A stretch of 64,000 bases of DNA from assembly GCF_046119375.1 (NCBI RefSeq), contig NW_027362769.1, forward strand, positions 370,140,001 to 370,204,000, read 5' to 3'. The notes beneath the pieces are model-generated. The model did no database searches. It was not told where the DNA came from and worked only from the letters and a program-made list of their open reading frames with translations. Made by a program: the position numbers and the translations under genes. Source of the stretch: Phyllobates terribilis (taxonomy: Eukaryota). Below are positions 7,474-44,100 of this stretch, one piece after another; positions within the stretch are counted from its first letter, which is position 1; each line of letters starts with the position of its first letter.

Positions 7474-7477
7474 TGTA

Positions 7478-7527
<50 letters not shown>

Positions 7528-7530
<3 letters not shown>

Positions 7531-9163: not shown

Positions 9164-9194
9164 TATATATAATGAGTAAGAATAGAAGGAAGCG

Positions 9195-11145
9195 GCCATG
9201 TGTGGCCCTGTCACTGGGGGGCACTATTGGTTGTCACCGGCTGCCATGTGTGGTCTGGGCACTGGGGGGCAGTATTGGTTGTCACCAGCAGCCATGTTTG
9301 GCCCTGGCACTGGGGGGCGGTATTGGTTGTCACCAGCTGCTGTGTGTGGTCCTGGCACTGTGGGGCAGTATTGGTTATCACCAGCTGCTATGTGTGGCCC
9401 TGGCACTGAGGGGGCAGTATTGGGTGTAACCAGCTTCCATGTATGGCCCTGGCACCAGGACAATAGTACTTGTCACCAGCAGCCATGTGTGGCCCTGGCA
9501 CTGGGGGGGCAGTATTTGTTGTCAGCAGCAGCCATGTGTGGTCCTGACACTGGAAGCAGCTAGTGACAACCAATACTGCCATGTGTGGTCCTGGCACTGG
9601 AGGGCAGTATTGGTTGTCAGCAGCAGCCATTTGTGGCCCTGGCACTGGGGGGCAGTATTGGTTGTCCGCAGCAGCCATGTGTGGCCCTGGCACTGGGAGG
9701 TGGTATTGGTTGTCACTAGCTGCTATATGTGGTCCTGGCACTGGGGGGCAGTATTGGTTGTCACCAGCTGCCATGTGTGGCCCTGGCACTGGGGGGCAGT
9801 ATTGGTTACCACCAGCTGCCATGTGTGGCCCTGGCACTGGGGGGCAGTATTGGTTGTCACCAGCTGCCATGTGTGGCCCTGGCACTGGGGGGCAGTATTG
9901 GTTGTCACCAGCTGCCATGTGTGGCCCTGGCACTGGGGGGCAGTATTGGTTGTCACTAGCTGCCGTGTGTGGTCCTGGCACTGAGGGCAGTATTGGTTGT
10001 CACTAGCTGCTGTGTGTGGTCCTGGCACTGGGGGGGCAGTATTGGTTGTCACTAGCTGCCGTGTGTGGTCCTGGCACTGGGGGGCAGTATTGGTTGTCAC
10101 TAGCTGCTGTGTGCGGTCCTGGCACTGGGGGCAGTATTGGTTGTCACTAGCTGCTGTGTGTGATCCTGGCACTGGGGGCAGTATTGGTTGTCACTAGCTG
10201 CCGTGTGTGGTCCTGGCACTGGGGGGGCAGTATTGGTTGTCACTAGCTGCTGTGTGTGATCCTGGCATTGGGGGCAGTATTGGTTGTCACTAGCTGCCGT
10301 GTGTGGTCCTGGCACTGGGGGGCAGTATTGGTTGTCACTAGCTGCCGTGTGTGGTCCTGGCACTGGGGGGCAGTATTGGTTGTCACTAGCTGTCGTGTGT
10401 GGTCCTGGCACTGGGGGGCAGTATTGGTTGTCACTAGCTGCTGTGTGTGGTCCTGGCACTGGGGGGCAGTATTGGTTGTCAGCAGCAGCCATGTGTGGCC
10501 CTGGCACTGGCGGGCAGTATTGGTTGTCACCAGCAGCCATGTTTGGCCCTGGCACTAGGACAATTGTGGTTGTCACCAGCTGCCATGTGTGGTCCTGGCA
10601 CTGGGGGGCAGTATTGGTTGTCACCAGCTGCCATGTTTGGCCCTGGCACTAGGACAATTGTGGTTGTCACCAGCTGCCATGTGTGGTCCTGGCACTGGGG
10701 GGCAGTATTGGTTGTCACCAGCTGCCATGTTTGGCCCTGGCACTAGGACAATTGTGGTTGTCACCAGCTGCCATGTGTGGCCCTGGCACTGGGGGCAGTA
10801 TTGGTTGTCACCAGCTGCCATGTTTGGCCCTGGGGGGCAGTATTGGTTGTCACTAGCTGCTGTGTGTGGTCCTGGCACTGGGGGGCAGTATTGGTTGTCA
10901 CCAGCTGCCATGTGTGGTCCGGGCACTGGGGGGCAGTATTGGTTGTCAGCAGCAGCCATGTGTGGCCCTGGCACTGGGGGGCAGTATTGGTTGTCACTAG
11001 CTGCTGTGTGTGGTCCTGGCACTGGGGGGCAGTATTGGTTGTCAGCAGCAGCCATGTGTGGCCCTGGCACTGGGGGCAGTATTGGTTGTCACCAGCTGCC
11101 ATGTGTGGTCCTGGCACTGGGGGGCGATATTGGTTGTCCCCAGCT
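9195..11145. repeat. Minisatellite, 48-bp unit, ~40 copies, directly upstream of TRAP1
   Basis: Unit GGCACTGGGGGGCAGTATTGGTTGTCACCAGCTGCCATGTGTGGCCCT; translates as the 16-aa repeat MCGPGTGGQYWLSPAA in the ORF track. Confidence 0.97.
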
Positions 11146-20400: not shown

Positions 20401-21848
20401 GGACTCGAGTGTCCAATATCAAGGTATGTGCACACCCTAAGTATACAGAGTGATCTTTATACCCTATACTGGATTAGTAGTGTTTGTCTTCATGTAGGTG
20501 ACACCACGTCTGGACACTCACCCGGCCATGATTACTGTGTTGGAGATGGGGGCGGCCCGACATTTCCTGCGCACACAGCAGCTTGCCAAAACAAATGAAG
20601 AACGAGCTCAGCTCCTGCAGCCCACTCTGGAGATCAACACTGGGTGGGTTTCTACATTCATAAGGCCTAACAGACAGTAGCTGGACCTGCCCTGGAGCTC
20701 TACTGGCGAGGTCTTGCAGGTTTTGCTGTTGTTGGTAGTGCTGGCTTGGCGACAGGTCAACTCTCCTACACCACTTGTCCGACGCTTGGCATTGTGCTTG
20801 GTGATGTTCAGCTTCTCAGCCATGAAGCTCCCGGCGGGGGAGGAGGTCTGGACTCTGCAGTTATGGGGTCAGCAGAGCGTTGGTGACTTTTCTGCCCTCT
20901 GCTCCTCAGCACTCGGCCCCCCGCTCTGTAAAGTTACGGGGTCTTCACTTTGTGGCTGAGTTGCTGCGGTTTTTTCCACTTCTCAATAATATCACTCACA
21001 GGTGATTGGCAGATTTAGGAGGAAGAAATGTCATGAACGGACTTGTTACCCCGGTGGCTCCTATTACAGGACCGCGCTGGTATCAGTGAGCTCTGCACCA
21101 CCGGCCGTTCTGTCACATGTTAGTAAAGGCTGACGGCATGGCGGGGAGCCGGAGGTTATACCCTGGGGGGGGCGGACTTTCTACTTTGGGGGGCGAGGGG
21201 CCGGATGTTATACACCAGGTATAACACCGACGTGTAAATTATGGATTTTAAATCCATTTATTAAGATGCTCTGTCACTGTGCCCCCTAGTGGCAGAACAT
21301 TTTCTTTTAAATCGACTCATTCTGTAAGCCAGAAATACTTTTTATTCTGCAGTAACGAGCTACGAATTACTAAATCAGTGTATGAGGAGTATCAGCCGCT
21401 TGTATAACACAGCTCCGTCTAGATTTAAAGGGACACAGCTGAAACAATCCACGCCCATAACTACTTTTTGTGACCGCCCCCCCTTGATCTGACATTATTC
21501 TAGGCATCCTCTTATTAAGAAGCTCGGACAGCTGAAGGACACGGACCAAGACCTGGCCAAATTGCTTCTCGATCAGGTGAGACACAAGCTGGAGCCGCAG
21601 TGGAGCGCTGGACGCGGCACAGACAGTGATTCTTTGCACCTTTACTCACTGTGAATTTTTTAAACCTAAGCACAGATATATTTTGTATGGCATTAGTAAA
21701 CTGCATAAGTAATGGCGCCCTAAAATATCTGTATTGTTCTACCCAGATCTATGAGAATGCCATGATCGCTGCCGGGCTGAACGACGACCCCCGGCCCATG
21801 GTAGGGCGTCTCAATGAGTTGTTAACGAAAGCCCTGGAGAAGCATTGA
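11275..21848 (+). CDS. TRAP1: TRAP1, mitochondrial HSP90 (HSP75); 18 exons, 2133 nt, 710 aa
   Basis: Exons all GT-AG and in phase. Motifs [69 protein letters not shown]; C-terminus ALEKH*; Arg/Ser/Ala-rich presequence. Confidence 0.97.
13551..13721 (+). CDS. TRAP1: TRAP1 exon 2
   Basis: ...TTTCAG acceptor; ...[17 protein letters not shown]; GTGAGC donor. Confidence 0.9.
14382..14464 (+). CDS. TRAP1: TRAP1 exon 3
   Basis: [24 protein letters not shown]. Confidence 0.95.
14644..14784 (+). CDS. TRAP1: TRAP1 exon 4
   Basis: [19 protein letters not shown]...GTLTIQ. Confidence 0.95.
15030..15101 (+). CDS. TRAP1: TRAP1 exon 5
   Basis: [24 protein letters not shown]. Confidence 0.95.
15188..15348 (+). 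CDS. TRAP1: TRAP1 exon 6
   Basis: AFLEALQNQ...[17 protein letters not shown]. Confidence 0.95.
15521..15630 (+). CDS. TRAP1: TRAP1 exon 7
   Basis: [29 protein letters not shown]. Confidence 0.95.
16454..16527 (+). CDS. TRAP1: TRAP1 exon 8
   Basis: [24 protein letters not shown]. Confidence 0.95.
16605..16760 (+). CDS. TRAP1: TRAP1 exon 9
   Basis: [21 protein letters not shown]...SIFYVPEM. Confidence 0.95.
16889..17009 (+). CDS. TRAP1: TRAP1 exon 10
   Basis: [25 protein letters not shown]...LPKWLRFLR. Confidence 0.95.
17711..17780 (+). CDS. TRAP1: TRAP1 exon 11
   Basis: [24 protein letters not shown]. Confidence 0.95.
18230..18940. repeat. Minisatellite, ~44-bp unit with a 131-bp trimeric period, TRAP1 intron 11
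   Basis: AAAGTAAACAATGCCCGACC..TACCAATGT recurs at 18232, 18276, 18363 and 18407. Confidence 0.85.
19540..19687 (+). CDS. TRAP1: TRAP1 exon 12
   Basis: [21 protein letters not shown]...REGIVTT. Confidence 0.95.
19850..20035 (+). CDS. TRAP1: TRAP1 exon 13
   Basis: [12 protein letters not shown]...[23 protein letters not shown]. Confidence 0.95.
20119..20257 (+). CDS. TRAP1: TRAP1 exon 14
   Basis: [30 protein letters not shown]. Confidence 0.95.
20338..20423 (+). CDS. TRAP1: TRAP1 exon 15
   Basis: [28 protein letters not shown]. Confidence 0.93.
20498..20643 (+). CDS. TRAP1: TRAP1 exon 16
   Basis: [25 protein letters not shown]...PTLEINT. Confidence 0.95.
20690..21095 (-). mobile_element. 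Degraded Tc1-like transposase fragment in TRAP1 intron 16
   Basis: Minus strand reads as a decayed Tc1 N-terminus: [38 protein letters not shown]; contains deletions and frameshifts. Confidence 0.6.
21504..21576 (+). CDS. TRAP1: TRAP1 exon 17
   Basis: [24 protein letters not shown]. Confidence 0.95.
21747..21848 (+). CDS. TRAP1: TRAP1 exon 18 (last coding)
   Basis: [33 protein letters not shown]. Confidence 0.95.
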
Positions 21849-22114
21849 ACACCTCCACCATCATCATCCTCCTGTAAGATCTGCTCCCGGGAACGATGGA
21901 CCCCACATCCTGGAGGACAGGAAACGTTTTGGGTTTCTGCACAAGGAGTATCTGACACAGCCGCCATGTTTCCTATGGAAAGAGAGACCGAAAAGATATA
22001 ATGTGGATGTATTTATTGGACAGTCCCCGCACGTCGGCCCCAGGGTTCCCCAGTGTACGGCCGTGCAGTAACGCTCGCTCATTGTTGTAAATGTTACACT
22101 TATAACCAAGAGAT

Positions 22115-22120
22115 ATTAAA
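22115..22120 (+). terminator. Candidate TRAP1 polyadenylation signal (ATTAAA)
   Basis: ATTAAA ~270 nt after the stop, followed by a U-rich tract at ~22150. Confidence 0.5.
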
Positions 22121-22898
22121 GATGTCACTAATTTGTATAAAGTCACCTCGTTTTTTATTTCTCTAATATTTATACTTGTCGCTACCTAGACAGCACCCGA
22201 GAGTAGTTCAGGATTCCTGTTTTTTTTTTAGCACACAAAGAAAAACGTCAGCAACATGGAGGATATTACACAGTGGTAGTGATCAGGGTATATGTGAATC
22301 CAGCTCTGAAATGAGTTAAAAGACTTACTAGAGAGCTCACGGCGATCTTTCTGTGCCTCCCTCTGCCTGTTTCCTCTCCCTTCTCCGTTCTATAGAGTAT
22401 AAAGGGCTGTGTCACATAAGCCTGCAGTAAAGACAGATTTGAGTTCAAGGGGGAGAGGAAGAAGTGGCTCATAAGTGGGGAAGGAAACCGATTTCTCTGA
22501 TAAGACATATTACAAAGTTTCTTATCTTTGCCTGTACTGTTAGTTTATGCAAAGTTTGTTTAATGTACAGTTCCTTTTTAAGAGGCTGCAAATGGAAGAA
22601 GATGTCCCTTCTAATGCTTATCACCACACCACGCAGGATGATTGAGGAATGCCAATGGCAATGTTATAGCTGCTGGGGGGCTACTGAAGACCCCCGTGTC
22701 TGCCATGTTTATACACCTATGAAGCTGCTTAGCCTGTCTCCATAAGCGATCGGTGCTTTCACAATACACTGTAATATCGCTGTATAGCAATGTATTGTAC
22801 AAGCAACTTCAGGCCCAAGTCCCCCAGGGGGGGACTAAATAAAATGGAAAAAAAAAATATATGTATTAAAAAAAAAAAAAGAAATAAATATATATATA

Positions 22899-24523
22899 CA
22901 GTACAGACCAAAAGTTTGGACACACCTCATTTAAAGATTTTTCTGTATTTTCTTGACTATGAAAATTGTACATTCACACTGAAGGCATCAAAACTATGAA
23001 TTAACACATGTGGAATTATATACTTAACAAAAAAGTGTGAAACAACTGAAAATATGTCTTATATTCTAGGTTCTTCAAAGTAGCCACCTTTTGCTTTGAT
23101 GGCTGCTTTGCACACTCTTGGCATTCTCTTGATGAGCTTCAAGAGGTAGTCACCAGAAATGGTCTTCCAACAATCTTGAAGGAGTTCCCAGAGATGCTTA
23201 GCACTTGTTGGCCCTTTTGCCTTCACTCTGCGGTCCAGCTCACCCCAAACCATCTCGATTGGGTTCAGGTCTGGTGACTGTGGAGGCCAGGTCATCTGGC
23301 GTAGCCCCCCCATCACACTCCTCCTTGGTCAAATAGCCCTTACACAGCCTGGAGGTGTGTTTGGGGTCATTGTCCTGTTGAAAAATAAATGATGGTCCAA
23401 CTAAACGCAAACCGGATGGAATAGCATGCCGCTGCAAGATGCTGTGGTAGCTATGCTGGTTCAGTATGCCTTCAATTTTGAAAAAATACTCAACAGTGTC
23501 ACCAGCAAAGCACCCCCACACCATCACACCTCCTCCTCCATGCTTCATGGTGGGAACCAGGTATGTAGAGTCCATCCGTTCAACTTTTCTGCATCGCACA
23601 AAGACACGGTGGTTGGAACCAAAGATCTCAAATTTGGACTCATCAGTCCAAAGCACAGATTTCCACTGGTCCAATGTCCATTCCTTGTGTTCTTTAGCCC
23701 AAACAAGTCTCTTCTGCTTGTTGCCTGTCCTTAGCAGTGGTTTCCTAGCAGCTATTTTATCATGAAGGCCTGCTGCACAAAGTCTCCTCTTAACAGTTGT
23801 TGAAGAGATGTGTCTGCTGCTAGAACTCTGTGTGGCATTGACCTGGTCTCTAATCTGAGCTGCTGTTAACCTGCGATTTCTGAGGCTGGTGACTCGGATA
23901 AACTTATCCTCAGAAGCAGAGGTGACTCTTGGTCTTCCTTTCCTGGGGCGGTCCTCATGTGAGCCAGTTTCTTTGTAGCGCTTCATGGTTTTTGCAACTG
24001 CACTTGGGGACACTTTTAAAGTTTTCCCAATTTTTCGAACTGACTGACCTTCATTTCTTAAAGTAATGATGGCCACTCGTTTTTCTTTACTTAGCTGCTT
24101 TTTTCTTGCCATAATACAAATTCTAACAGTCTATTCAGTAGGACTATCAGCTGTGTATCCACCAGACTTCTGCACAACACAACTGATGGTCCCAACCCCA
24201 TTTATAAGGCAAGAAATCCCACTTATTAAACCTGACAGGGCACGCCTGTGAAGGGAAAACCATTTCCGGTGACTACCTCTTGAAGCTCATCAAGAGAATG
24301 CCAAGAGTGTGCAAAGCAGTCATCAAAGCAAAAGGTGGCTACTTTGAAGAACCTAGAATATAAGACATATTTTCAGTTGTTTCACACTTTTTTGTTAAGT
24401 ATATAATTCCACATGTGTTAATTCATAGTTTTGATGCCTTCAGTGTGAATGTACATTTTTCATAGTCATGAAAATACAGAAAAAACTTTAAATGAGAAGA
24501 TGTGTCCAAACTTTTGGTCTGTA

Positions 24524-24577: not shown

Positions 24578-25276
24578 ATATCCATATCACTCTCCTTTTG
24601 CCAGGACATAAAAAAATGGTAACATTTTGGTATCGCCATGTGTGTAACTGTCCAAAATAATGAAATATCAGATTACTTCTCCCATACGGTGACTGCCAAA
24701 ATGGAAATGGCAGAATCGCTGTTATTTTTATCACTTCACCTCCCCCAAAAAAATGGAATAAAAAGAGATCAAAAGTTGTATGGACCTCGAGGTTGTAACA
24801 ATAAAAATTCCGGCACGTCCCACAATGAAACAAGTCCTGATAAAACAACCGACCGGAAAATAAAACATTAGAAAAGCTCATGGAAGGAGAGAAGGAAAAA
24901 TCTACAGCTTGAAGAGGCCTCAGTCACAGGCCCACAGAGATCTGGGGTTGAAAGGTCTACATACCCTTTAATGACCAATGTTAAGGGGTCCTTTTATTTT
25001 TTATAAAGGTATAGAATATGTTTTATGTATAGGTAACGTCTGTTTATATGGTTTATGTACAGGTACAAGGAAAAGCAAATTCCGGCACACACGTGTTGGT
25101 GGTTAATTCGTTTATTCCACAACTTCAAAAAAAAAAAAAAGCATTTCAGCCTGTCCAAGGCTTTTTTCAATTGAATAAACAAATTGACCACCAACACGTG
25201 AGTGCCGGGATTAACTTTTCCTATAACACTACTCTCCACGTGTGCCACCCCAGCTACAGGCTGTCTTTATGGTTTA

Positions 25277-28200
25277 CTAGATGGTGGCCCAATTCGAACG
25301 CATCGGGTATTCTAGAATAGGTATGCGGCCGACGGGGCGCAATTAGCAGAGCGGCGTATAAATTTGGCGCCCAAATCGCTAATTGGTCGCGTTAGGCAAC
25401 TGCGACCAATCAGCAAAGCGGTGTTTAAATTTGGCGGCAATATCGGTGATTGGACGCGGGCGGCGGCTGCGACCAATCTGCGAACCGTGTTAGTGAGGAA
25501 TGGAGAGCGTGTTTAAATTTGGAACCAAAATCGCTGATTAGTCGCGACCAATCAGCAAAGAGGTCTTTAAATTTGGCGACAATACTGCTGATTGGTCGCG
25601 GCCGGAGACCGCGACCAATCAGCAGAGCGATGCAGAGCGGGGTTTAAATTTGGCGGCACAATTCCTGATTGGTCGCCGGCCGCGACCAATCAGCAGAGCG
25701 GTGTTTAAATTTGGCGCCAAAATCGCTGACTAGTCGCGGCTGACGGCCGCGACCAATCAGCAGAGCGTTGTTTAAAGTTTGCGCCAATACTGCTGATTGA
25801 TCTCGGCCAGCAACCGCGATCAATCAGCAGAGCGTTGTTTAAATTTGGCGCCAATCTCGCTGATTGGTCGCGGACGCCAGACGCGTCCAATCAGCAGAGC
25901 GTTGTTTAAATTTGGCGCCAAGCTCGCTGATTGGTCGCGGCTGGCGTCCGCGACCAATTAGCACAGCAGTGTTTAAATGTGGCGGCAAGATCGATGATTG
26001 GTCGCGGCCGCTATTTATATGTGGCGCCCAAATCGGTGATTGGCTGCGACCAATCACCGATCTTGGCTCCACATTTAAACACTGCTGTGCTGATTGGTCG
26101 CCGACGCTGGGCGCGACCAATCACCGATTTTGGCGCCACATTTAAATAGCGTCCGCGACCAATCAGTACAGCAGTGTTTAAATGTGGAGCCAAGATCGGT
26201 GATTGGTCGCGGCCGATATTTAAATTTGGCGGCCAAATCGGTGATTGGTCACGGGCTGCGTCCGCGACCAATCAGCAGAGCGGTGTTTAACTTTAGCGCC
26301 AAGATCACTGATTGGTCGCGTGCGGAGAGCGCGACCAATCAGCGAATCGTATTGGTGAGGAGCGGGGAGCGGAATCGTATTAGTGAGGACCGGGGAGCGC
26401 CGCTGCCTGTGCGGCTACTTCCGCTGCGAGAACCCGGGACATGAGCGACTGCTCGCAGCAGAAGTATCCCGACCCGCAGCGCCGCTCCCCGGTCTTCCCT
26501 TCACACCCTAGCCGCTGATCTCCCCACAGTATCTGCATGGTGTTACAAAGGTCCGGACATTTGTGTTAAAAATCGTTGATTGGTCGCTGGCGCTGCCCGC
26601 GACCAATCACCGATTTGGGCGCCAAATTTAAATATCAGCCGCGACCAATCACCGATCTTGGCTCCACATTTAAACACCGCTGTGCTGATTGGTCGCCGAC
26701 GCTGGGCGCGACCAATCACCGATTTTGGCGCCACATTTAAATAGCGTCCGCGACCAATCAGTACAGCGGTGTTTAAATGTGGAGCCAAGATCGGTGATTG
26801 GTCGCGGCCGATATTTAAATTTGGCGCCCAAATCGGTGATTAGTCGCGGGCAGCGCCAGCGACCTATCAGTGATTTTTAACACAAATGTCCGGACCTTTG
26901 TAACACCATGCTGATACTGTGGGGACATCAGCGGCTGGGGTGTGAAGGGAGGACCGGGGAGCAGCGCTGCGGGTCGGGATAGTTCTGCTGCGAGCGCCCG
27001 CTCATGTCCCTGGTTCTCGCAGCGGAAGTATCTGCACAGGCAGCGCCGCTCCCCGGTCCTCCCTTCACACCCTAGCCGCTGATGTCCCCACAGTATCCGC
27101 ATGGTGTTACAAAGGTCCGGACATGTGTTTAAAATCGCTGATTGGTCGCTGGCGCTGCCCGCGACCAATCACCGATTTGGGCGCCAAATTTAAATATCGG
27201 ACGCGACCAATCACCGATCTTGGCTCCAGATTTAAACACCGCTGTGCTGATTGGTCGCGGCCGATATTTAAATTTGGCGCCCAAAACGGTGATTGGTCGT
27301 GGGCAGCGCCAGCGACCAATCAGCGATTTTTAACACAAATGTCCGGATCTTTGTAACACCATGCGGATACTGTGGGGACATCAGCGGCTAGGGTGTGAAG
27401 GGAGGGCCGGGGAGCGGCGCTGCGGGTCGGGATACTTCTGCTGCGAGCAGTCGCTCATCTCCAGGCTTCTCTCAGTGGAAGTATCCGCACAGGCAGCGGC
27501 GCTCCCCGGTCCTCACTAACACGATTCCGCTCCCCACTCCTCACCAATACGATTCGCTGATTGGTCGCGCTCTCCGCACGCGACCAATCAGTGATCTTGG
27601 CGCTAAAGTTAAACACCGCTCTGCTGATTGGTCACGGCCGCTGCCCGCGACCAATCACCGATTTGGGCGCTACATTTAAATAGCGGCCGCAACCAATCAG
27701 CACAGCGGTGTTTAAATGTGGAGCCAAGATCGGTGATTGGTCGCAGCCGATATTTAAATTTGGCGCCCAAATCGGTGATTGGTCGCGGGCACCGCCAGCG
27801 ACCAATCAGCGATTTTTAACACAAATGTCCGGATCTTTGTAACACCATGCAGATACTGTGGGGACATCAGCGGCTAGGGTGTGAAGGGAGGACCGGGGAG
27901 CGGCGCTGCGGGTCGGGATACTTCTGCTGCGAGCGCCCGCTAATGTCCCGGGTTGTCGCAGCGGAAGTGCCCGCACAGGCAGCGCCGCTGACATCCATGT
28001 GACATCTTGGCCCGCGACCAATCACTGATCTTGCGGCTAAAGTTAACCACTACTGTGCTGATTGGTCGCGGCCGATATTTAAATTTGGCGCCCAAATCGG
28101 TGATTGGTCGCGGGCAGCGTCCGCGACCAATCAGCACAGCGGTATTTAACTTTTGCGCTAAGATCAGTGATTGGTTGGGTCCGAAGACCGCGACCAATCA

Positions 28201-28663
28201 TCGAATCGTCTTGGTGAGGACCGGGGAGCGGCGCTGCCTGTGCGGCTACTTCCGCTGCGAGAACCCGGGACATGAGCGGGCGCTCGCAGCAGAAGAATCC
28301 CGACCCGCAGCGCCGGTCCTCCCTTCCGCATGGAGGTCAGCGACGCCGGCGGTCCTTCCGCTGCTACCGGCCGGGACATGAGCGCCTCGCGCCGCTCATC
28401 TCCCGGCTGCATCTCCGTCCCGCAGATGGGTCCGGCGGTCGGGGTCCTTCTGCTGGTACCGGCCAGGAGATGAGCGCCTCGCGGCGCTCATCTCCCGGCT
28501 GCATCGCCGCTGACCTCCGTCCCGCAGATGAGCCGCTAACGGCCGCCATCTTTTTTCTGAAATCCCGCGGCACTGATTGGCCGCTGCCGGACCAATGAGC
28601 CAAGTGGGATTTCCTGGACAGATAGACAGACAGACAGACGGGCTAAGACAATTATATAGTAGA
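25277..28663 (-). mobile_element. Non-autonomous Helitron (3.4 kb) with an internal palindromic CCAAT/E2F-CHR array
   Basis: Minus strand starts TCTACTATATAA (28663 down) followed by a (GTCT)n tract. It ends with an imperfect hairpin (25288-25307) 7 nt before CTAG (25277-25280). It sits between A and T with no TSD. No RepHel coding sequence. Confidence 0.8.
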
Positions 28664-28769
28664 TGTACAGTCTTTAAATGTTTTATTTGCCAGTGGTTTG
28701 GTCACTGCCCACAATACAAGGCTCTAGTCTCTGGTGAGGACATTTGGAGCTCTGCATTTGCTGTGAGCT

Positions 28770-28940
28770 GAGAGAACGCGGCCGCCATTTTGTCGGAGAC
28801 TCATTAGTCCAGGCGCCAGTTTCCAGTTTGAATCCGTCGTCATGGGAACAGCCGAGCGCTCGCGCAGGTCGCCTTTGCGCGGTGACGTCATGTGGAGTGT
28901 AACTTCCGGGTCCCTTAACGTACGAATGGCCAGAGGTAGG
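28770..28940 (+). promoter_or_regulatory. SLX4 CpG-island promoter and probable first exon (donor at 28936)
   Basis: YY1-type CCGCCATTTT at 28782, CRE TGACGTCA at 28883, ETS ACTTCCGG at 28902; CAGAG|GTAGGT donor; CpG-rich. Confidence 0.6.
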
Positions 28941-30348
28941 TGAGATTCTGTGGGGGAAACACAATGACGTGAACCGGCGGCTGCACGGGACAATGACGGA
29001 CACGGCCGAGTCCTATCTAGGCAGCTGGTGGTAGCGGAGAGAGATCTCCCAGCATTCCCTTACACCCTTAGCTTGCTGATGTAGAACTACAAGTCCCAGC
29101 CAGGCAGTCTGCTGTATCGGATAGTCTGGTCTGATCTCAATCTGGAATCCATTAGTCTTCCTGGCTTTTTATACAGAGCTGTATATGATGCTTAAAGGGG
29201 TTGTCCATTTTTGATTTTTGGGGCCAATATATATATATATTTTTTTAACTTATTTCCTGTATTTGGGACTAAAAATGATTTTTGCCTTTTGGGTTTTATT
29301 AGAAACTTTGCACCATTTGGCTTTTCCAGGCCTTTTTTTCCTGCACTTTCAACTTTGCTGCGGTCATAAACCTCAGAAAAAGCCAGATAAAGCAGTCACT
29401 GACTCTCCTCGGACCCTCACAGTGGGGCTCACTGACAGATTCCCAGTTGCCTCCTTCTGCAGCAAAAGACAGTGCAACACGGAGGCCGTAGGAGGCAAAC
29501 GGTGCAAGATTTTTAATGAAACCCAAGTGCAGAAATGATTTTTATCCAGAAATACCTGCATTAAAGTAAGAAATAAATAGTTATTATCCCAAAGGGGTTG
29601 TGTGGGGATAAAGCAAATGTCCCGATCTATGCATCGACTTACTGGTGTGAAGCTGCCGTCACATAAGTGCAGGGTAGATGTCCCTTTAATGATCTTGAAC
29701 TACAAGACCTCGGGTTGATAAAGTCTCACCTCCAGCCCGTCCGAACCAGCATCATCATCAGAGACATTGGACCTGATTCATTATTGCATTTGTGCCTTTT
29801 TTGTCTATTTTTTAGCCTATTTTTAATTTCCGCCTTATTCTTCTCTTAATTTGCGCCTTTTTTAAATGCTGCATTATAGGGACACAATGAGACTTGAGTG
29901 GAAATGTTTCCCCGTCCCTTTATCAGAGCAGTCCAATAATCTGGTGCCCATTCTCAGGAAGTGTTCAGTTTCTGTGCAGCGCCCCTGCAGGAAGAATGAA
30001 GCATTAATTCACTGATTGAGGACCTCAAGACTCCCAAGAAGTCAAATCCACTATACTAGTAAATTCACTGACTGAAGTGGACTAACTATGTTAAAAATCT
30101 ACCTATATTTTAATTTATTAAAAATATATATTTCCATATCCCCCGTGTTTTTTGCAGTCTATCCGTCATGGTCCTTTTGTTTTACGTTCAGATCATATTG
30201 TATTCGTATTAGATCAGGGTTCTTGTCTTCTTTTCTGAACGAATCTGGTGCAGGGAATTCAGAAAACAAGAACCCTGATCTAATACAAATACTGCAGTAA
30301 TAAAATAGGGGCGATCGATTATTCACCTGATGTGTAGCAGTAGCTTAA

Positions 30349-31832: not shown

Positions 31833-32109
31833 ATGGTCGAGTCGGATGATGAATTCGCTGAACTCTGCTCCAAACTCTTGAAACGGGTTAGGAAGAATAA
31901 CAACCCCATAGAAAGTCAGAATGTCCCCAAAGCCAGCACTACGGCACGGGGGAAAGTCAAGAGGACCAAACCGCCTGCGAGCAAGAAGCAGAAAAAAGAT
32001 GGGGGCAGCAGAGAGGCCGAAGTGGGTGTCATATCGGGACCTGACGGAGACCGACCAGAGCAGAGGAATCGGACGGCGTGGAGCCACCTTACTAATGGCC
32101 TCCAGGACG
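31833..32109 (+). CDS. SLX4: SLX4 coding exon 1 (5' boundary uncertain)
   Basis: MVESDDEFAELC...; GTAATA donor, phase 1. Candidate acceptors end at 31744 or 31818. Confidence 0.8.
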
Positions 32110-38100: not shown

Positions 38101-41100
38101 TGCAGTGTGAATCACAGCTGCCGTTTCCTGCAGCGGCTCAGGAATCCTCTGTGCCCGCTACTAAAGAGAATGAATATTCACTGTTCTGTATGCCCATGGG
38201 AGTGAGGAGGAGTGAATATTCATACTCTCTAATAGCGGGCACAGAGGATCGCTGAGCAGCTGCTGGAAGCGGCAGCTGCGACTCACACTGCGCTATTAAA
38301 GAAAATGAATATTCACCCCTCTCCACTCCATGGGCGTGGAGAAGAGTGAATATTCATTTTCTTTAGCAGGGGGCACACGTGGTAGCTGCTGCAGTGGCTA
38401 CTGCCTGTGCCCGCTCCTCCGCCGCCGCATCCCCTCACCACCACCGGTATATACTGTATATATAAGTATATACCGGAGTATAAGCCGAGGGGGGCTTTTT
38501 CAGCTTAAAAAATGTGGTGAAAAAGTCGGCTTATACTCGATTATATACGGTATTCTATTGCAAGCAACTTTTGAGACACTTGTTGAGTAGCAGAAAGTAT
38601 AAACTTCCTATTTTTACACTTTCATAGATCCAAAAAGTTATAAAAGCCGGTTACATGGAGGCCCGATCGCTAGGGTCACCCACCAATTGTGAAATTTGTG
38701 AGACCCGGAGAGCAAAACAAGCATGCATTGTCCCGTTTCCAGCAGCCCTATGGTTAATAATATATCAGTCCACTGTAGGTGCCGCAGCTCCCCCTAGTGG
38801 TGGGTGAGTTCTGCATGGGAAAATTTTAATACTAAGTTGCTTAGTCAAGATTTTTCAAGGGGGGTCCCTTGTATATCACAAGATGTCAGCACTTTGTGCA
38901 GAGGTCGTGGTCACTGCTGCAATCAGCTGATTACTCCAGTTGCTGCTTCTGGCTCCCATGACAAGCGGTGCGTGCTGATAAGGCAAGCGGCAGCCGCCGG
39001 AGGGAGAGTGTAGGGGTACACAATGGTCATCCAGATGGTGGAATAAGTCTGCCAGAATAGCAGCTGCTTCATGGGGTGTTTGAGCAGAGGGACAGAACTA
39101 GTCCAGGGTCTTAGGGGCTGGTGCACGACACAGTGATTCTATCTGGTGCTTCCTGCACTAGGGAAAATACAGGGTATTAGCTTTGCCTTAAAGTGAACCT
39201 GTCCGATACAGTCCAGTCTGCAGGCGGCAGGTTATAGAGCAGTAGGAGCTGAGCGGATTGATACTTTTGTGGTTAAATATTCATTATAACTTCTATTCAT
39301 TGAAATCCCTGCTCTGGGGTTAGGAGTCCAGTGGGCGGTCCTACTGTGTGATGGGCAGAGCTGTCGGTCACTGATTGGGCCTTTCAGTCCAGTGGGCGGT
39401 CCTACTGTGTGATGGGCAGAGCTGTCAGTCACTGATTGGGCTTTTCAGTCCAGTGGGCGGTCCTACTGTGTGATGGGCAGAGCTGTCGGACACTGATTGG
39501 GCTTTTCAGTCCAGTGGGCGGTCCTACTGTGTGATGGGCAGAGCTGTCAGTCACTGATTGGGCTTTTCAGTCCAGTGGGCGGTCCTACTGTGTGATGGGC
39601 AGAGCTGTCGGACACTGATTGGGCTTTTCAGTCCAGTGGGCGGTCCTACTGTGTGATGGGCAGAGCTGTCAGTCACTGATTGGGCTTTTCAGTCCAGTGG
39701 GCGGTCCTACTGTGTGATGGGCAGAGCTGTCGGTCACTGATTGGGCCTTTCAGTCCAGTGGGCGGTCCTACTGTGTGATGGGCAGAGCTGTCAGTCACTG
39801 ATTGGGCTTTTCAGTCTAGTGGGCGGTCCTACTGTGTGATGGGCAGAGCTGTCGGACACTGATTGGGCTTTTCAGTCCAGTGGGCGGTCCTACTGTGTGA
39901 TGGGCAGAGCTGTCAGTCACTGATTGGGCTTTTCAGTCCAGTGGGCGGTCCTACTGTGTGATGGGCAGAGCTGTCGGTCACTGATTGGGCTTTTCAGTCC
40001 AGTGGGCGGTCTTACTGTGTGATTGGCAGAGCTGTCTGTCACTGATTGGGCTTTTCAGTCCAGTGGGCGGTCCTACTGTGTGATGGGCAGAGCTGTCGGA
40101 CACTGATTGGGCTTTTCAGTCCAGTGGGCGGTCCTACTGTGTGATGGGCAGAGCTGTCGGACACTGATTGGGCTTTTCAGTCCAGTGGGCGGTCCTACTG
40201 TGTGATGGGCAGAGCTGTCAGTCACTGATTGGGCTTTTCAGTCCAGTGGGCGGTCCTACTGTGTGATGGGCAGAGCTGTCGGACACTGATTGGGCTTTTC
40301 AGTCCAGTGGGCGGTCCTACTGTGTGATGGGCAGAGCTGTCAGTCACTGATTGGGCTTTTCAGTCCAGTGGGCGGTCCTACTGTGTGATGGGCAGAGCTG
40401 TCGGTCACTGATTGGGCCTTTCAGTCCAGTGGGCGGTCCTACTGTGTGATGGGCAGAGCTGTCAGTCACTGATTGGGCTTTTCAGTCTAGTGGGCGGTCC
40501 TACTGTGTGATGGGCAGAGCTGTCAGTCACTGATTGGGCTTTTCAGTCCAGTGGGCGGTCCTACTGTGTGATGGGCAGAGCTGTCGGTCACTGATTGGGC
40601 TTTTCAGTCCAGTGGGCGGTCTTACTGTGTGATTGGCAGAGCTGTCTGTCACTGATTGGGCTTTTCAGTCCAGTGGGCGGTCCTACTGTGTGATGGGCAG
40701 AGCTGTCGGACACTGATTGGGCTTTTCAGTCCAGTTGTCGGTCCTACTGTGTGATGGGCAGAGCTGTCGGACACTGATTGGGCTTTTCAGTCCAGTGGGC
40801 GGTCCTACTGTGTGATGGGCAGAGCTGTCGGTCACTGATTGGGCTTTTCAGTCCAGTGGGCGGTCCTACTGTGTGATGGGCAGAGCTGTCGGACAATGAT
40901 TGGGCTTTTCAGTCCAGTGGGCGGTCCTACTGTGTGATGGGCAGAGCTGTCAGTCACTGATTGGGCTTTTCAGTCCAGTGGGCGGTCCTACTGTGTGATG
41001 GGCAGAGCTGTCGGACACTGATTGGGCTTTTCAGTCCAGTGGGCGGTCCTACTGTGTGATGGGCAGAGCTGTCAGTCACTGATTGGGCTTTTCAGTCCAG

Positions 41101-44100
41101 TGGGCGGTCCTACTGTGTGATGGGCAGAGCTGTCGGTCACTGATTGGGCCTTTCAGTCCAGTGGGCGGTCCTACTGTGTGATGGGCAGAGCTGTCAGTCA
41201 CTGATTGGGCTTTTCAGTCTAGTGGGCGGTCCTACTGTGTGATGGGCAGAGCTGTCGGACACTGATTGGGCTTTTCAGTCCAGTGGGCGGTCCTACTGTG
41301 TGATGGGCAGAGCTGTCAGTCACTGATTGGGCTTTTCAGTCCAGTGGGCGGTCCTACTGTGTGATGGGCAGAGCTGTCGGTCACTGATTGGGCTTTTCAG
41401 TCCAGTGGGCGGTCTTACTGTGTGATTGGCAGAGCTGTCTGTCACTGATTGGGCTTTTCAGTCCAGTGGGCGGTCTTACTGTGTGATTGGCAGAGCTGTC
41501 TGTCACTGATTGGGCTTTTCAGTCCAGTGGGCGGTCTTACTGTGTGATTGGCAGAGCTGTCTGTCACTGATTGGGCTTTTCAGTCCAGTGGGCGGTCCTA
41601 CTGTGTGATGGGCAGAGCTGTCGGTCACTGATTGGGCTTTTCAGTCCAGTGGGCGGTCTTACTGTGTGATTGGCAGAGCTGTCTGTCACTGATTGGGCTT
41701 TTCAGTCCAGTGGGCGGTCTTACTGTGTGATTGGCAGAGCTGTCAGTCACTGATTGGGCTTTTCAGTCCAGTGGGTGGTCCTACTGTGTGATGGGCAGAG
41801 CTGTCGGTCACTGATTGGGCTTTTCAGTCCAGTGGGCGGTCCTACTGTGTGATGGGCAGAGCTGTCGGTCACTGATTGGGCTTTTCAGTCCAGTGGGCGG
41901 TCTTACTGTGTGATTGGCAGAGCTGTCTGTCACTGATTGGGCTTTTCAGTCCAGTGGGCGGTCTTACTGTGTGATTGGCAGAGCTGTCTGTCACTGATTG
42001 GGCTTTTCAGTCCAGTGGGCGGTCCTACTGTGTGATGGGCAGAGCTGTCGGTCACTGATTGGGCTTTTCAGTCCAGTGGGCGGTCCTACTGTGTGATGGG
42101 CAGAGCTGTCGGTCACTGATTGGGCTTTTCAGTCCAGTGGGCGGTCCTACTGTGTGATGGACAGAGCTGTCGGTCACTGATTGGGCTTTTCAGTCCAGTG
42201 GGCGGTCCTACTGTGTGATGGGCAGAGCTGTCGGTCACTGATTGGGCTTTTCAGTCCAGTGGGCGGTCCTACTGTGTGATGGGCAGAGCTGTCGGTCACT
42301 GATTGGGCTTTTCAGTCCAGTGGGCGGTCCTAATCTGTGATTGACAGCTATCCCTCCATGCACAGTTGTACAAGTAAGACTCGGTAGGACCGCCCACTGG
42401 ACTCCTAGGTCTCCTAAGCCAAGATTGTGCAGGGATTTCAAGGAAAAGCTATAATGATTCTTTACCACTACGCTATATTAATCTGCTCTCTAACCCGCCG
42501 CCTGCAGATTTTTCTGCTTTTCGGTGTGACCTTTTGCCATACATCTGTTTAATTCTGATTTGTGCGACGATTACGTTGAGGAAACTTGTAATACTCAAGA
42601 ATTTGTCTTTTTTCTAGGTTTGATGTGAAAAGTCTGATAGAAGCCTGTGAATCTGTAATCGCTGGGACGCACAACTCCGAAGGTCAGATATCCACAGAAG
42701 AAGAGGAGGGTGATGATGGAGGAGAGCGAGCAGAGACCTTCCAGGAGTTGTTGAAGTCCATGTGGCTGGATGAAGGTGAAGACATCTTTGAAGATTTGAA
42801 GCCGGAGGACAAGGAGAAGCCGGATGGTAGTGGCGGTGTAGGAGAGGGAGAGCTGGAAGAGATCTATGAATTTGCTTTGACTCAACGTAAAATGTTAGCG
42901 GAGCAAGAATCCAACAGTGAAGAGGAAGACCAATCAGAAGACGTCTCTCCAAAGTCTAAAAGTCTTACTCTAGACGAGGGAGAAGGAATGGATTTGGTAA
43001 TCGCTGCTCCACCTAAAGTGTCTCCAAACACGAAAGTCATGGACAGTTCTCCCAGAAAATCGCCTGCGTGTTTTCTGTCTCACAGCCCTGAATATTCTGT
43101 GGTTCCTCCCATAGCTTCTTCTGCCAAGTCCACAATAGAGCAGTCATCTTCTTGCTCTGATGTTCACGTTAATGTTTCAGGGACTTCTCCAACTAAACAA
43201 GTCATTTCCTCTGTCATTTCTCTGATCTCCCCAAACAGAGAAGACGACCCCGAGGCCGATATGTTTGCTCCTCACAGTCCTCCACCTCTTGATGATAGTT
43301 ACGACCGCATGTTCTCACAGACGTGTGGTGAATACGGGGAGCCGTCCGGTATGGGGGAAAGCAAATCCCAAATAAATCCAGCTAGTCCTCCTGATCAGCA
43401 ACCTGTGCTTACCAGCTCACCTACCGCCATGCCGTATCCCACCCTCGGGTCTTCTCCAAATATCCGGTCACGTTCATTTCCAGACCGGCCTTCGTACTCA
43501 AGTGAACATGAAAAATCCCTGCACTCCAGTGTCAGAGATTCTCTTCATCGTACAGCTTCTCAGAATGGAAAAGAGCCTTCTCCCAAATCTCAAGATGCCG
43601 ACATCATCCTGATCTTGTCCTCAGATGAAGAGGCCGAGTCCAGCAATCAGTCTGCTGCACCGACCAGAAGTTCATGCTTTGCTGCGCCCGATATAGCTAA
43701 GGCCATTAAAGATTCTCCGGTTAGTTTTACACAAGGGAGAAGAAGCGAAGGGCTTTCCCGTCTGGAAATGAGCAGTAGCTCAGAGATGTCTTGGTTGGTG
43801 CCCGCTACACCCTTACCCCAATTAGCAAGCTCCAGAATTTCCCCATTGCAGACATCATGTATACCTCCGACCACTCAGTCTTTACAGAAGACGTCCCACG
43901 CAACTCAGTCACCTCCAAATTCATGGAATATGTCCCACACCGCTCAGTCACCTCCAAAGTCCAAGGTAACGTCCCATGCAACTCCGTCACCTCCAAATTC
44001 ATGGAAGACGTTCCACACCGCTCAGTCACCTCCAAAGTCCAAGGTAACGTCCCATGCAACTCCGTCACCTCCAAATTCATGGAAGATGTCCCACACCGCT

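What the first reader, a model, noticed from the sequence alone, without database searches (positions are those of the whole stretch)
25277..28663. Helitron loaded with a cell-cycle promoter grammar (NF-Y + E2F/CDE-CHR) docked on the SLX4 promoter
Seen: Helitron hallmarks (5' TC, 3' hairpin + CTAG, A|T target, no TSD). Inside are roughly 50 CCAAT/ATTGG pentamers (hand count), mostly in the optimal GACCAATCAG context. There are 9 exact copies of GGCGCCAAATTTAAA on either strand (25704, 25838, 25905, 26618, 26814, 27180, 27267, 27753, 28078), plus variants. Known: GGCGC-4nt-TTTAAA matches CDE/CHR geometry, TTTGGCGC is an E2F site, and CCAAT + CDE/CHR is the signature of DREAM/MMB-regulated cell-cycle genes; several Fanconi-pathway genes are DREAM/E2F targets. 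The element ends ~120 bp from the SLX4 promoter motifs. Inference: a captured and amplified cell-cycle promoter module that could rewire SLX4, spread cell-cycle control genome-wide, or act as a factor sink.
Basis: partly seen in the sequence, partly recalled or inferred. Interest (0 to 1): 0.85.

Follow-up and report, generated by a model that had tools for sequence, protein, structure and literature searches.

The report
Helitron minisatellite beside frog SLX4 promoter
A 3.4-kb rolling-circle transposon (Helitron), filled with hairpin repeats that read like NF-Y/E2F/CHR promoter sites, sits about 50 bp upstream of the conserved SLX4 core promoter of a frog. The motifs belong to the transposon family, the position fits the known Helitron preference for promoters, and no effect on SLX4 is shown.

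Summary
Window 25277-28663 carries 59 CCAAT/ATTGG pentamers, 45 of them in an RRCCAATCA[G/C] context. It has 9 exact copies of the 15-mer at the listed positions and 13 SGCGC-N4-TTYRAA pairs. Composition-matched random sequence gives about 0.

The element lies on the minus strand: A|TC...CTAG|T, with no target-site duplication. A 23-nt paralogous site 200 bp upstream spans the junction uninterrupted. The 3' hairpin is weak.

The body is a minisatellite of three modules (ATTGG-19-CCAAT hairpin, CCAAT-38-ATTGG, CCAAT-37-CCAAT) plus GC-rich modules, rearranged into nested palindromes.

It has no homology to the SLX4 promoter or to the rest of the window, so neither capture from this locus nor local expansion is supported.

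The native promoter and putative exon 1 (28780-28945) are 77% identical to those of Engystomops. That region keeps its own conserved TTTGAA and lacks the element.

Published work covers the remaining points:
- Helraiser integrates preferentially into CpG islands and promoters.
- Some Helitrons carry minisatellites or captured promoters.
- Human SLX4 is listed as not a DREAM target.

The copy is unusually CpG-rich (observed/expected 1.0-1.4), so it is either young or unmethylated.

This scan had already noted the same family on other pieces of this genome.

Verdict: a new member of a known kind. Regulatory rewiring is untested. Interest is modest.

The parts
25277..28663 (-). Non-autonomous Helitron, 3387 bp. 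It has no ORF above 124 aa and is a CpG island throughout (observed/expected 1.0-1.4).
   Evidence: Ends and flanks were read. ORFs. CpG profile. No copy of either terminus occurs elsewhere in the window.
28564..28663 (-). Left terminal region. It contains the 5' TC, TATATAA, a (GTCT)n run, and a small CCAAT hairpin (ATTGG-11-CCAAT at 28576-28596).
   Evidence: tokens 1-2.
28204..28563 (-). GC-rich region behind the left end. It has a YY1-like AAGATGGCGGC at about 28540-28551 and two 67-nt palindrome-containing repeats (28351-28417 and 28443-28509).
   Evidence: (family D8).
25964..28203 (-). Complex part. It holds the 109-bp higher-order units (ATTGG-19-CCAAT-37-CCAAT-38) and five GC-rich modules of about 225 bp in alternating orientation. 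Together they form nested palindromes with arms up to 452 nt at 94% identity.
   Evidence: (I1-I25, D2, D5).
25343..25963 (-). Simple tandem array of nine 67-bp units (hairpin link plus CCAAT-38-ATTGG). The units are older and more diverged than those in the complex part.
   Evidence: period 67, 69% matches; alignment by period.
25277..25342 (-). Right terminal region ending in CTAG. It has only a weak, imperfect palindrome.
   Evidence: -7.4 kcal/mol, z = -0.5.
25040..25062 (+). Paralogue of the target site. It matches the joined flanks at 21 of 23 positions, with 16 exact bases across the A|T junction, and so serves as an in-window proxy for the empty site.
   Evidence: 0 matches expected in 100 shuffles.
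28712..28947 (+). Conserved SLX4 core promoter and putative non-coding exon 1. It carries a YY1-like GCCGCCATTTTG (28781-28792), GGCGCC...TTTGAA (28812-28832), a CRE (TGACGTCA), an ETS-like TTCCGGG, and a splice donor after 28947.
   Evidence: 76.6% identity over 171 bp to Engystomops L001:7555-7721, E = 2e-27; alignment.
31833..32084 (+). First coding exon of SLX4, starting at the initiator Met. Later exons run to 47073.
   Evidence: (tblastn with P0001 and P0002).

Best explanation
Shown: this is a non-autonomous Helitron on the minus strand, inserted precisely between an A and a T. The site is about 50 bp upstream of the conserved block of the frog SLX4 core promoter, and the transposon's 5' end faces the gene.

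Shown: its body is a family-specific minisatellite built from three modules.
- An ATTGG-19-CCAAT hairpin link.
- A CCAAT-38-ATTGG spacer.
- A CCAAT-37-CCAAT spacer.
The two spacers carry (T)TGGCGCC-AAA-TTTAAA. GC-rich hairpin modules are interspersed.

Inferred: the array grew by slippage or unequal exchange between units. It was then inverted repeatedly by template switching at the 13-14-bp inverted CCAAT arms, which produced the nested palindromes.

Inferred, with moderate confidence (about 0.45): the CCAAT/E2F/CHR-like content is the transposon family's own regulatory cassette. On this reading the high-affinity NF-Y sites help transcription or keep the element unmethylated in dividing or germline cells. 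It is not a module captured from SLX4.

Inferred: the position at the promoter reflects the Helitron preference for open chromatin and CpG islands.

Not shown: any effect on SLX4. The insertion leaves every conserved promoter block intact.
For: - Termini and flanks A|TC...CTAG|T with no target-site duplication.
- An uninterrupted paralogue of the target site, 21/23 matches with 0 expected by chance. This also excludes the alternative boundary with a TAGATG duplication.
- The module grammar and counts.
- The unit folds as a strong hairpin: -25.3 kcal/mol, z = -5.2.
- Palindrome centres I2, I15, I21 and I23 fall inside modules that themselves form hairpins.
- Palindrome arms are 93-94% identical, not 100%, so this is not a fold-back read artefact.
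- No homology between the element and the rest of the window, including the SLX4 promoter.
- The Engystomops SLX4 locus has the same TRAP1-SLX4-NLRC3 order and a 77% identical promoter block, but no unit of this repeat.
- In the nine units aligned by period, without bias from motif selection, motif columns deviate from consensus in 13 of 189 cells against 73 of 414 for the other columns. CAAATTTAAA is the least variable stretch and the hairpin loop the most variable.
- Literature: Helraiser integration is enriched 6.9-fold in CpG islands, 7.3-fold in promoters of highly expressed genes and 14-fold in open chromatin; HelibatN3 spreads a captured promoter (PMC4778049). Helitrons made largely of minisatellites are known in frogs and fish (PMC12001565). 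CAG immediately 3' of CCAAT is optimal for NF-Y, and NF-Y binds transposable elements that carry multiple CCAAT boxes (PMC12065363).
Against: - The 3' subterminal hairpin expected of canonical Helitrons is weak here.
- No second copy or RepHel gene is available in the window, so family membership rests on the ends, the target site, and unchecked notes from the same scan.
- The regulatory-cassette reading has no binding, expression or methylation data behind it.
- Many modules have lost the CDE or the CHR.
- Conservation of the CCAAT arms is confounded with hairpin pairing and with recent duplication of higher-order units.
- The high CpG content and the weak CpG hypermutability between arms (10 of 26 mismatches at CpG, where 22% of bases lie) fit either a young insertion or an unmethylated state. 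They do not separate the two.
Confidence: 0.75

Rival explanations
1. The array is a working cell-cycle promoter or enhancer module that binds NF-Y plus E2F/DREAM/MMB. It has been co-opted at this locus, extends the SLX4 CpG island, and changes SLX4 timing or level. Genome-wide, the family would spread such control or titrate the factors.
For: - The sites are of consensus quality: 45 RRCCAATCA[GC], 13 TTTSSCGC and 13 SGCGC-N4-TTYRAA.
- TTTAAA binds DREAM as strongly as TTTGAA (PMC4176359).
- The element is contiguous with the native CpG island and has even higher CpG observed/expected than it does.
- There is little CpG decay between arms that are 6% diverged.
- It lies within about 50-165 bp of the conserved promoter motifs.
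Against: - There are no functional data.
- A promoter-proximal position is expected from integration bias alone.
- The native promoter already has its own conserved TTTGAA.
- SLX4 is not a DREAM target in the human compilation.
- CHR elements act at or very near the transcription start (PMC4176359), whereas these lie 0.2-3.5 kb upstream and on both strands.
- Most S38 modules have lost the CDE or the CHR.
- Earlier follow-ups in this scan reported other copies of the family as decaying.
Confidence: 0.1
2. The resemblance to transcription-factor sites is incidental. The units would be structural DNA of the transposon: hairpins with a conserved AT-rich loop core that rolling-circle replication or the Rep/helicase uses or tolerates. 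The palindromic GGCGCC and TTTAAA would reflect dyad symmetry, not factor binding.
For: - The paired CCAAT boxes are the two arms of one hairpin.
- GGCGCC, TTTAAA and TTTGGCGCCAAA are all palindromes.
- The least variable stretch is the loop core CAAATTTAAA, not the CCAAT boxes.
- A related small hairpin sits in the left terminal region (tokens 1-2).
- Box spacing is not that of known G2/M promoters (the 31-33 bp figure is from my own recollection, unchecked).
Against: - Stem positions beyond ATTGGTCGC/GCGACCAAT are not kept by compensatory changes (H19 list).
- The flanks of the pentamer match the NF-Y optimum more closely than a hairpin alone requires.
- The combination of E2F site, 4-nt spacer and CHR is improbable by chance.
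- Helraiser needs only its terminal sequences, and its 3' palindrome is dispensable for circle formation (PMC4778049).
Confidence: 0.13
3. Not a transposon. The array would be a local tandem expansion of SLX4 upstream sequence, or an assembly artefact of a palindromic region.
For: - There is only one copy in the window.
- The frog window also holds other large minisatellites.
- The region is highly palindromic.
Against: - The element has no homology to flanking or promoter DNA.
- It has sharp ends with TC/CTAG at an A|T site, matched by an uninterrupted paralogue.
- The palindrome arms differ by 6%, which fold-back artefacts do not produce.
- Notes from the same scan report the family at other places in this genome (not checked by me).
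Confidence: 0.02

Closest known systems
Minisatellite-filled non-autonomous Helitrons (Helitron-N2_XT / Heli2Xen in Xenopus, Helitron-N1_DR in zebrafish; also DINE-1 and oyster Helentron-borne satellite repeats)
   Same: These are rolling-circle elements whose body is mostly a tandem array carried between the element's own termini. The arrays vary between copies (PMC12001565; PMC7492417 and PMC4067079, listed).
   Different: Those are Helitron2/Helentron-type elements, with for example a 166-bp unit. This one has canonical Helitron1-type TC...CTAG ends, a 67/109-bp unit made of CCAAT hairpins, and heavy internal inversion.
Heli1Xen1, a horizontally transferred Helitron1 family of Xenopus, Bufo, lizards and bichirs (Li and Pollet 2025)
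   Same: TC...CTAG ends and a TA-rich left end (TATATAAA there, TATATAA here). The family is reported in the tens of thousands of non-autonomous copies in Bufo. The window is from a hyloid frog: its NLRC3 exon is 88% identical to that of Eleutherodactylus coqui.
   Different: The published right-end hairpin CCCGTTA...TAACGGG is absent here. That paper describes no 67-bp CCAAT array. I could not compare consensus sequences because no supplement is held. I do not file this element as a member.
HelibatN3 (bat Helitron carrying the captured NUBPL promoter)
   Same: A Helitron with promoter-like cargo that lands near transcription starts and can drive or modify host transcripts (PMC4778049).
   Different: There the cargo is a single recognisable host promoter with an exon fragment and a splice donor. 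Here no donor gene is identifiable, and the cargo is a repeated 67-bp unit related to the element's own left end.
LTR12/ERV9 and other NF-Y-bound retroviral LTRs with multiple CCAAT boxes
   Same: A transposable-element family whose regulatory region carries several CCAAT boxes in an optimal CCAATCAG-type context and is bound by NF-Y (PMC12065363; PMC5085097 and PMC3730095, listed).
   Different: Those are LTR retroelements of mammals with binding shown experimentally. This is a DNA rolling-circle element in a frog with about 59 boxes arranged as hairpins, and no binding data.
CDE/CHR and E2F/CLE cell-cycle promoters (CCNB1, CDC25C, RBL1/p107)
   Same: TTGGCGC, a 4-nt spacer, then TTTAAA. This matches the p107 CDE (TTGGCGC) and the CCNB1 CHR (TTTAAA) with the published spacer (PMC4974476, PMC4176359 and PMC5729532). 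CCAAT boxes lie nearby.
   Different: The elements are not at a known transcription start. They are reiterated on both strands over 3 kb. Box spacing is 24, 42 or 43 bp. More than half of the modules lack the CDE or the CHR.

Membership tests
Helitron (canonical, Helitron1-type) | 5' terminus TC | tested here: met
   On the minus strand the element starts TCTACTATATAA at 28663.
Helitron (canonical, Helitron1-type) | 3' terminus CTRR | tested here: met
   It ends ...CCACCATCTAG at 25277.
Helitron (canonical, Helitron1-type) | Insertion between host A and T without a target-site duplication | tested here: met
   The flanks are A|...|T. A paralogous site at 25040-25062 reads GGTTTATGTACAG uninterrupted, matching the joined flanks at 21 of 23 positions with 0 expected by chance.
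Helitron (canonical, Helitron1-type) | Short GC-rich palindrome about 10-20 nt upstream of the 3' end | tested here: inconclusive
   The last 70 nt fold at -7.4 kcal/mol, z = -0.5. Only TATTCTAGAATA and imperfect stems are present.
Helitron (canonical, Helitron1-type) | Multiple genomic copies sharing the termini, and an autonomous partner encoding RepHel | not testable with these tools
   There is no other copy in the window. No copies were found in the metagenome, viral or prokaryote collections. Earlier notes from this scan report other copies, one of them upstream of RepHel; I did not check these.
Heli1Xen1 family (Li and Pollet 2025) | Right-end hairpin CCCGTTA...TAACGGG and TA-rich left end TATATAAA | tested here: not met
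   The left end has TATATAA, but the right-end hairpin motif is absent (one search compared with the paper text).
CDE/CHR or E2F/CLE cell-cycle promoter element | CHR TTYRAA with a CDE/E2F site exactly 4 nt upstream | tested here: met
   There are 13 SGCGC-N4-TTYRAA pairs, 6 of them as TTGGCGC-N4-TTTAAA, against 0.07 expected.
CDE/CHR or E2F/CLE cell-cycle promoter element | Location at or very near a transcription start, with CCAAT boxes upstream at the usual spacing | tested here: not met
   The sites are spread over 3 kb on both strands and lie 0.2-3.5 kb from the putative SLX4 exon 1. Box centres are 24, 42 or 43 bp apart. The requirement for a position near the transcription start is from PMC4176359.
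CDE/CHR or E2F/CLE cell-cycle promoter element | Binding of DREAM/MMB (LIN54, E2F4) and cell-cycle-dependent transcription | not testable with these tools
   No chromatin or expression data are available.
Helitron with captured host promoter (HelibatN3 type) | Cargo homologous to a host gene promoter or exon | tested here: inconclusive
   The element has no homology to the SLX4 promoter or to the other 60.6 kb of the window, and none to the Engystomops locus. The rest of the genome could not be searched.

The most novel reading that the evidence does not exclude
A highly abundant frog Helitron family carries a self-amplifying array of genuine NF-Y/E2F/LIN54 binding sites that keeps its copies unmethylated. 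This copy would then have fused with the SLX4 CpG island into a 3.7-kb unmethylated promoter domain, and would add proliferation- or germline-linked control to a repair gene that is not under DREAM control in mammals.
Probability: 0.1. Interest if true: 0.7.

Novelty: new member of a known kind. Interest (0 to 1): 0.3.

Why it matters
If the boxes are bound in vivo, this would be a DNA-transposon counterpart of LTR12-type NF-Y elements, and a natural experiment on how a transposon-borne CpG island merges with a host promoter. As it stands, it is a well-delimited Helitron insertion. It is useful for annotating the SLX4 upstream region. It is also a testable locus: the conserved core promoter is intact, and a related frog lacks the insertion.

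Tried and rejected
- **Searches for other copies.** Two exact-pattern scans of metagenome contigs and one each of viral and prokaryotic genome contigs all returned 0 hits.
- **Spurious-ORF search.** A protein search with a spurious 116-aa ORF from the array, meant to find the repeat in other assemblies, gave no hit.
- **Rfam scan of 24800-29200.** Only sub-threshold miRNA-like hairpin matches, all below gathering scores. There is no known RNA gene.
- **Alternative boundary.** A boundary with a 6-bp TAGATG direct repeat acting as a target-site duplication is rejected, because the paralogous site reads GGTTTATGTACAG.
- **Local origin from the SLX4 promoter.** Rejected.
- **Fold-back assembly artefact.** Rejected, because the palindrome arms differ by about 6%.
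- **Heli1Xen1 membership.** The right-end hairpin motif is not met, and no supplementary consensus is held.
- **Literature search.** A search for Helitron plus CCAAT plus NF-Y found nothing relevant.
- **Species.** Not fixed. The best NLRC3 hit is Eleutherodactylus coqui at 88%, and the best SLX4 hit is Engystomops at 56%.
Full report
**Context**

The window is from a frog. An 814-aa ORF at 42625-45069 matches SLX4 of Engystomops pustulosus and Staurois parvus. tblastn maps SLX4 coding exons from 31833 (the initiator Met) to 47073 on the plus strand. A NACHT exon of NLRC3 follows at 55744-57417. Its best named relative is Eleutherodactylus coqui at 88% identity, so the genome is a hyloid frog or toad. 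I could not fix the species.

**Observation**

All the counts hold.
- There are 32 CCAAT and 27 ATTGG in 25277-28663.
- 44 of them are in GACCAATCA/TGATTGGTC and 25 in the full GACCAATCAG form.
- The 15-mer occurs exactly at the nine listed positions and nowhere else in the window.

Against 300 first-order Markov simulations the composite motifs are far above expectation.
- RRCCAATCA[GC]: 45 observed, 0.10 expected.
- SGCGC-N4-TTYRAA: 13 observed, 0.07 expected.
- TTTSSCGC: 13 observed, 1.4 expected.

The excess comes from repeat amplification, so what matters statistically is the content of a few unit types, not the 59 sites.

**Is it a Helitron, and where are its ends?**

Read on the minus strand, the element starts TCTACTATATAA at 28663 and ends ...CCACCATCTAG at 25277. 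The host bases are A before the start and T after the end.

A 23-nt sequence at 25040-25062 matches the joined flanks at 21 of 23 positions, with 16 exact bases across the junction. None is expected by chance. This acts as an in-window proxy for the empty site. It also rules out an alternative boundary with a 6-bp TAGATG duplication.

The expected 3' subterminal hairpin is weak: -7.4 kcal/mol, z = -0.5. No other copy of either terminus is in the window, and no ORF exceeds 124 aa. I call it a non-autonomous Helitron1-type element. Two membership criteria remain untested here: multiple copies sharing the termini, and an autonomous RepHel partner.

Earlier notes from this same scan report the family on other pieces of this genome, once upstream of RepHel. 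I treat those as leads only.

**Anatomy**

In Helitron orientation the body is built from three modules.
- H19: ATTGG-19 nt-CCAAT, a hairpin link, 20 copies.
- S38: CCAAT-38 nt-ATTGG, 18 copies.
- S37: CCAAT-37 nt-CCAAT, 11 copies.

H19 plus S38 gives the 67-bp unit of the simple array at 25343-25963 (TRF). H19 plus S37 plus S38 gives a 109-bp higher-order unit in the complex part, 25964-28203. That part also holds five GC-rich modules of about 225 bp in alternating orientation.

The left end carries TATATAA, a small ATTGG-11-CCAAT hairpin (28576-28596) and a YY1-like AAGATGGCGGC.

A unit folds as a strong DNA hairpin: -25.3 kcal/mol, z = -5.2. The region is full of nested palindromes, with arms up to 452 nt at 94% identity. 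The centres of I2, I15, I21 and I23 lie in modules that themselves form hairpins. This fits inversion by template switching at the inverted CCAAT arms. Because the arms are 6% diverged, a fold-back assembly artefact is unlikely.

**How good is the 'grammar'?**

- TTTAAA binds DREAM as strongly as TTTGAA and is the CCNB1 CHR (PMC4176359).
- The LIN54 consensus is TTYRAA, the CDE is SGCGCS, and the p107 CDE is TTGGCGC (PMC4974476).
- A 4-nt spacer separates E2F/CLE and CDE/CHR (PMC5729532).
- CAG immediately after CCAAT is optimal for NF-Y (PMC12065363).

Several points weaken the promoter reading.
- Only 13 of about 29 spacers keep SGCGC-N4-TTYRAA.
- The commonest S38 variant reads GGCTCC-ACA-TTTAAA and another reads GGCGCT-AAAG-TTAAAC.
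- Box centres are 24, 42 or 43 bp apart.
- CHR elements normally sit at the transcription start (PMC4176359). These are spread over 3 kb on both strands.

In the nine units aligned purely by period, motif columns deviate from the consensus in 13 of 189 cells, against 73 of 414 for the remaining columns. The least variable stretch is CAAATTTAAA and the most variable is the 9-nt hairpin loop. This shows constraint, or recent homogenisation, on the boxes and the core. It cannot separate factor binding from hairpin or loop function. Stem positions beyond ATTGGTCGC are not maintained by compensatory change.

**Origin of the cargo**

The element has no significant similarity to the other 60.6 kb of the window, including the SLX4 promoter. 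No unit occurs in the 26-kb Engystomops SLX4 locus. Capture from SLX4 and local expansion are therefore rejected. Capture from an unknown donor cannot be excluded. The related hairpin in the element's own left end, and the scan's notes on other copies, point to a family-intrinsic array.

**The SLX4 promoter**

The Engystomops locus (L001) has the same TRAP1-SLX4-NLRC3 gene order. Window 28780-28945 aligns to L001:7555-7721 at 76.6% identity (E = 2e-27). That block lies 2.3-2.9 kb upstream of the ATG exon in both species.

The alignment shows these conserved features:
- a YY1-like GCCGCCATTTTG;
- GGCGCC...TTTGAA (28812-28832);
- TGACGTCA;
- an ETS-like TTCCGGG;
- a splice donor after 28947.

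I take this as the core promoter plus a non-coding exon 1. That is an inference, because no RNA data are available.

The Helitron 5' end (28663) lies about 50 bp from where conservation starts, 118 bp from the YY1-like block, and 164 bp from the conserved TTTGAA. It interrupts none of them. The native promoter already has a canonical CHR-like hexamer. In the human compilation, SLX4 is one of the few Fanconi genes marked as not a DREAM target (PMC5729532 Table 2). In the mouse study of Fanconi genes, Slx4 was among the 42 genes tested and the seven that met the criteria are only partly visible in the passage I read (PMC4821997), so I draw no conclusion from it.

**Why is the element there?**

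Helraiser integrates 6.9-fold more often than expected into CpG islands. The enrichment is 7.3-fold in promoters of highly expressed genes and 14-fold in open chromatin (PMC4778049). A promoter-adjacent Helitron therefore needs no selective explanation.

**CpG state**

CpG observed/expected is 1.0-1.4 across the whole element. It is 0.24-0.65 in the upstream flank and 0.3-0.6 downstream of exon 1.

Between the 452-nt arms of I1, 10 of 26 mismatches lie in CpG dinucleotides, which hold 22% of the bases. That is roughly a two-fold excess, not the ten-fold or more I would expect for methylated vertebrate DNA (the expected figure is my own knowledge). Either the copy and its internal duplications are young, or the sequence has spent its history largely unmethylated. 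The sequence alone cannot decide.

**Verdict**

The Helitron call and the adjacency to the promoter are supported. The ideas of a captured module, rewired SLX4, and a factor sink are untested. Integration bias, the intact native promoter and the degenerate state of many modules all weaken them.

Each component is already a known kind:
- Helitrons filled with minisatellites (PMC12001565);
- Helitrons carrying promoters (PMC4778049);
- transposable-element families with multiple NF-Y sites (PMC12065363).

This scan had already met the same family elsewhere in the genome. I rate it a new member of a known kind, with modest interest. It leaves one clear, testable question: are the boxes bound, and do they keep promoter-adjacent copies unmethylated?

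Noticed in passing
window 39325-42341: A 61-bp minisatellite of 49.5 copies at 96% identity sits inside an SLX4 intron. It is flanked by inverted terminal sequences (CTGCAGGCGGC.GG... at about 39218 and its complement at about 42495), so it looks like a TIR DNA transposon with an internal array. Each unit also contains an ATTGG.
   Followed up: partly
window 9191-11145: A 48-bp minisatellite of 41 copies at 86% identity, G- and T-rich on the plus strand. It explains the GC and AT skew seen at 9-11 kb.
   Followed up: no
window 25063-25260: A fold-back, MITE-like element of about 198 bp lies immediately left of the Helitron, with inverted arms at about 25066-25115 and 25180-25235. It sits between the two copies of the 23-nt sequence used as the empty-site proxy. 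Rfam gives only sub-threshold miRNA-like hits there.
   Followed up: partly
window 28712-28947 and L001:7490-7721: The SLX4 core promoter is conserved between two frogs. It has a YY1-like box, GGCGCC...TTTGAA, a CRE, an ETS-like box and an exon-1 splice donor. The conserved TTTGAA hints at CHR-type control of frog SLX4, although human SLX4 is listed as not a DREAM target.
   Followed up: partly
window 21480-22140: These are the last exons or 3' end of the upstream gene, similar to the HSP90-family (TRAP1-like) gene upstream of SLX4 in Engystomops. The TRAP1-SLX4-NLRC3 order is conserved.
   Followed up: partly
window 23240-24112 (-), 7449-8228 (+), 61079-62131 (+): Three Tc1/mariner transposase ORFs. 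The third, of 350 aa, has HTH plus DDE_3 domains and looks intact; the scan has already noted it (s1-209173). The first lies 1.2 kb upstream of the Helitron.
   Followed up: no
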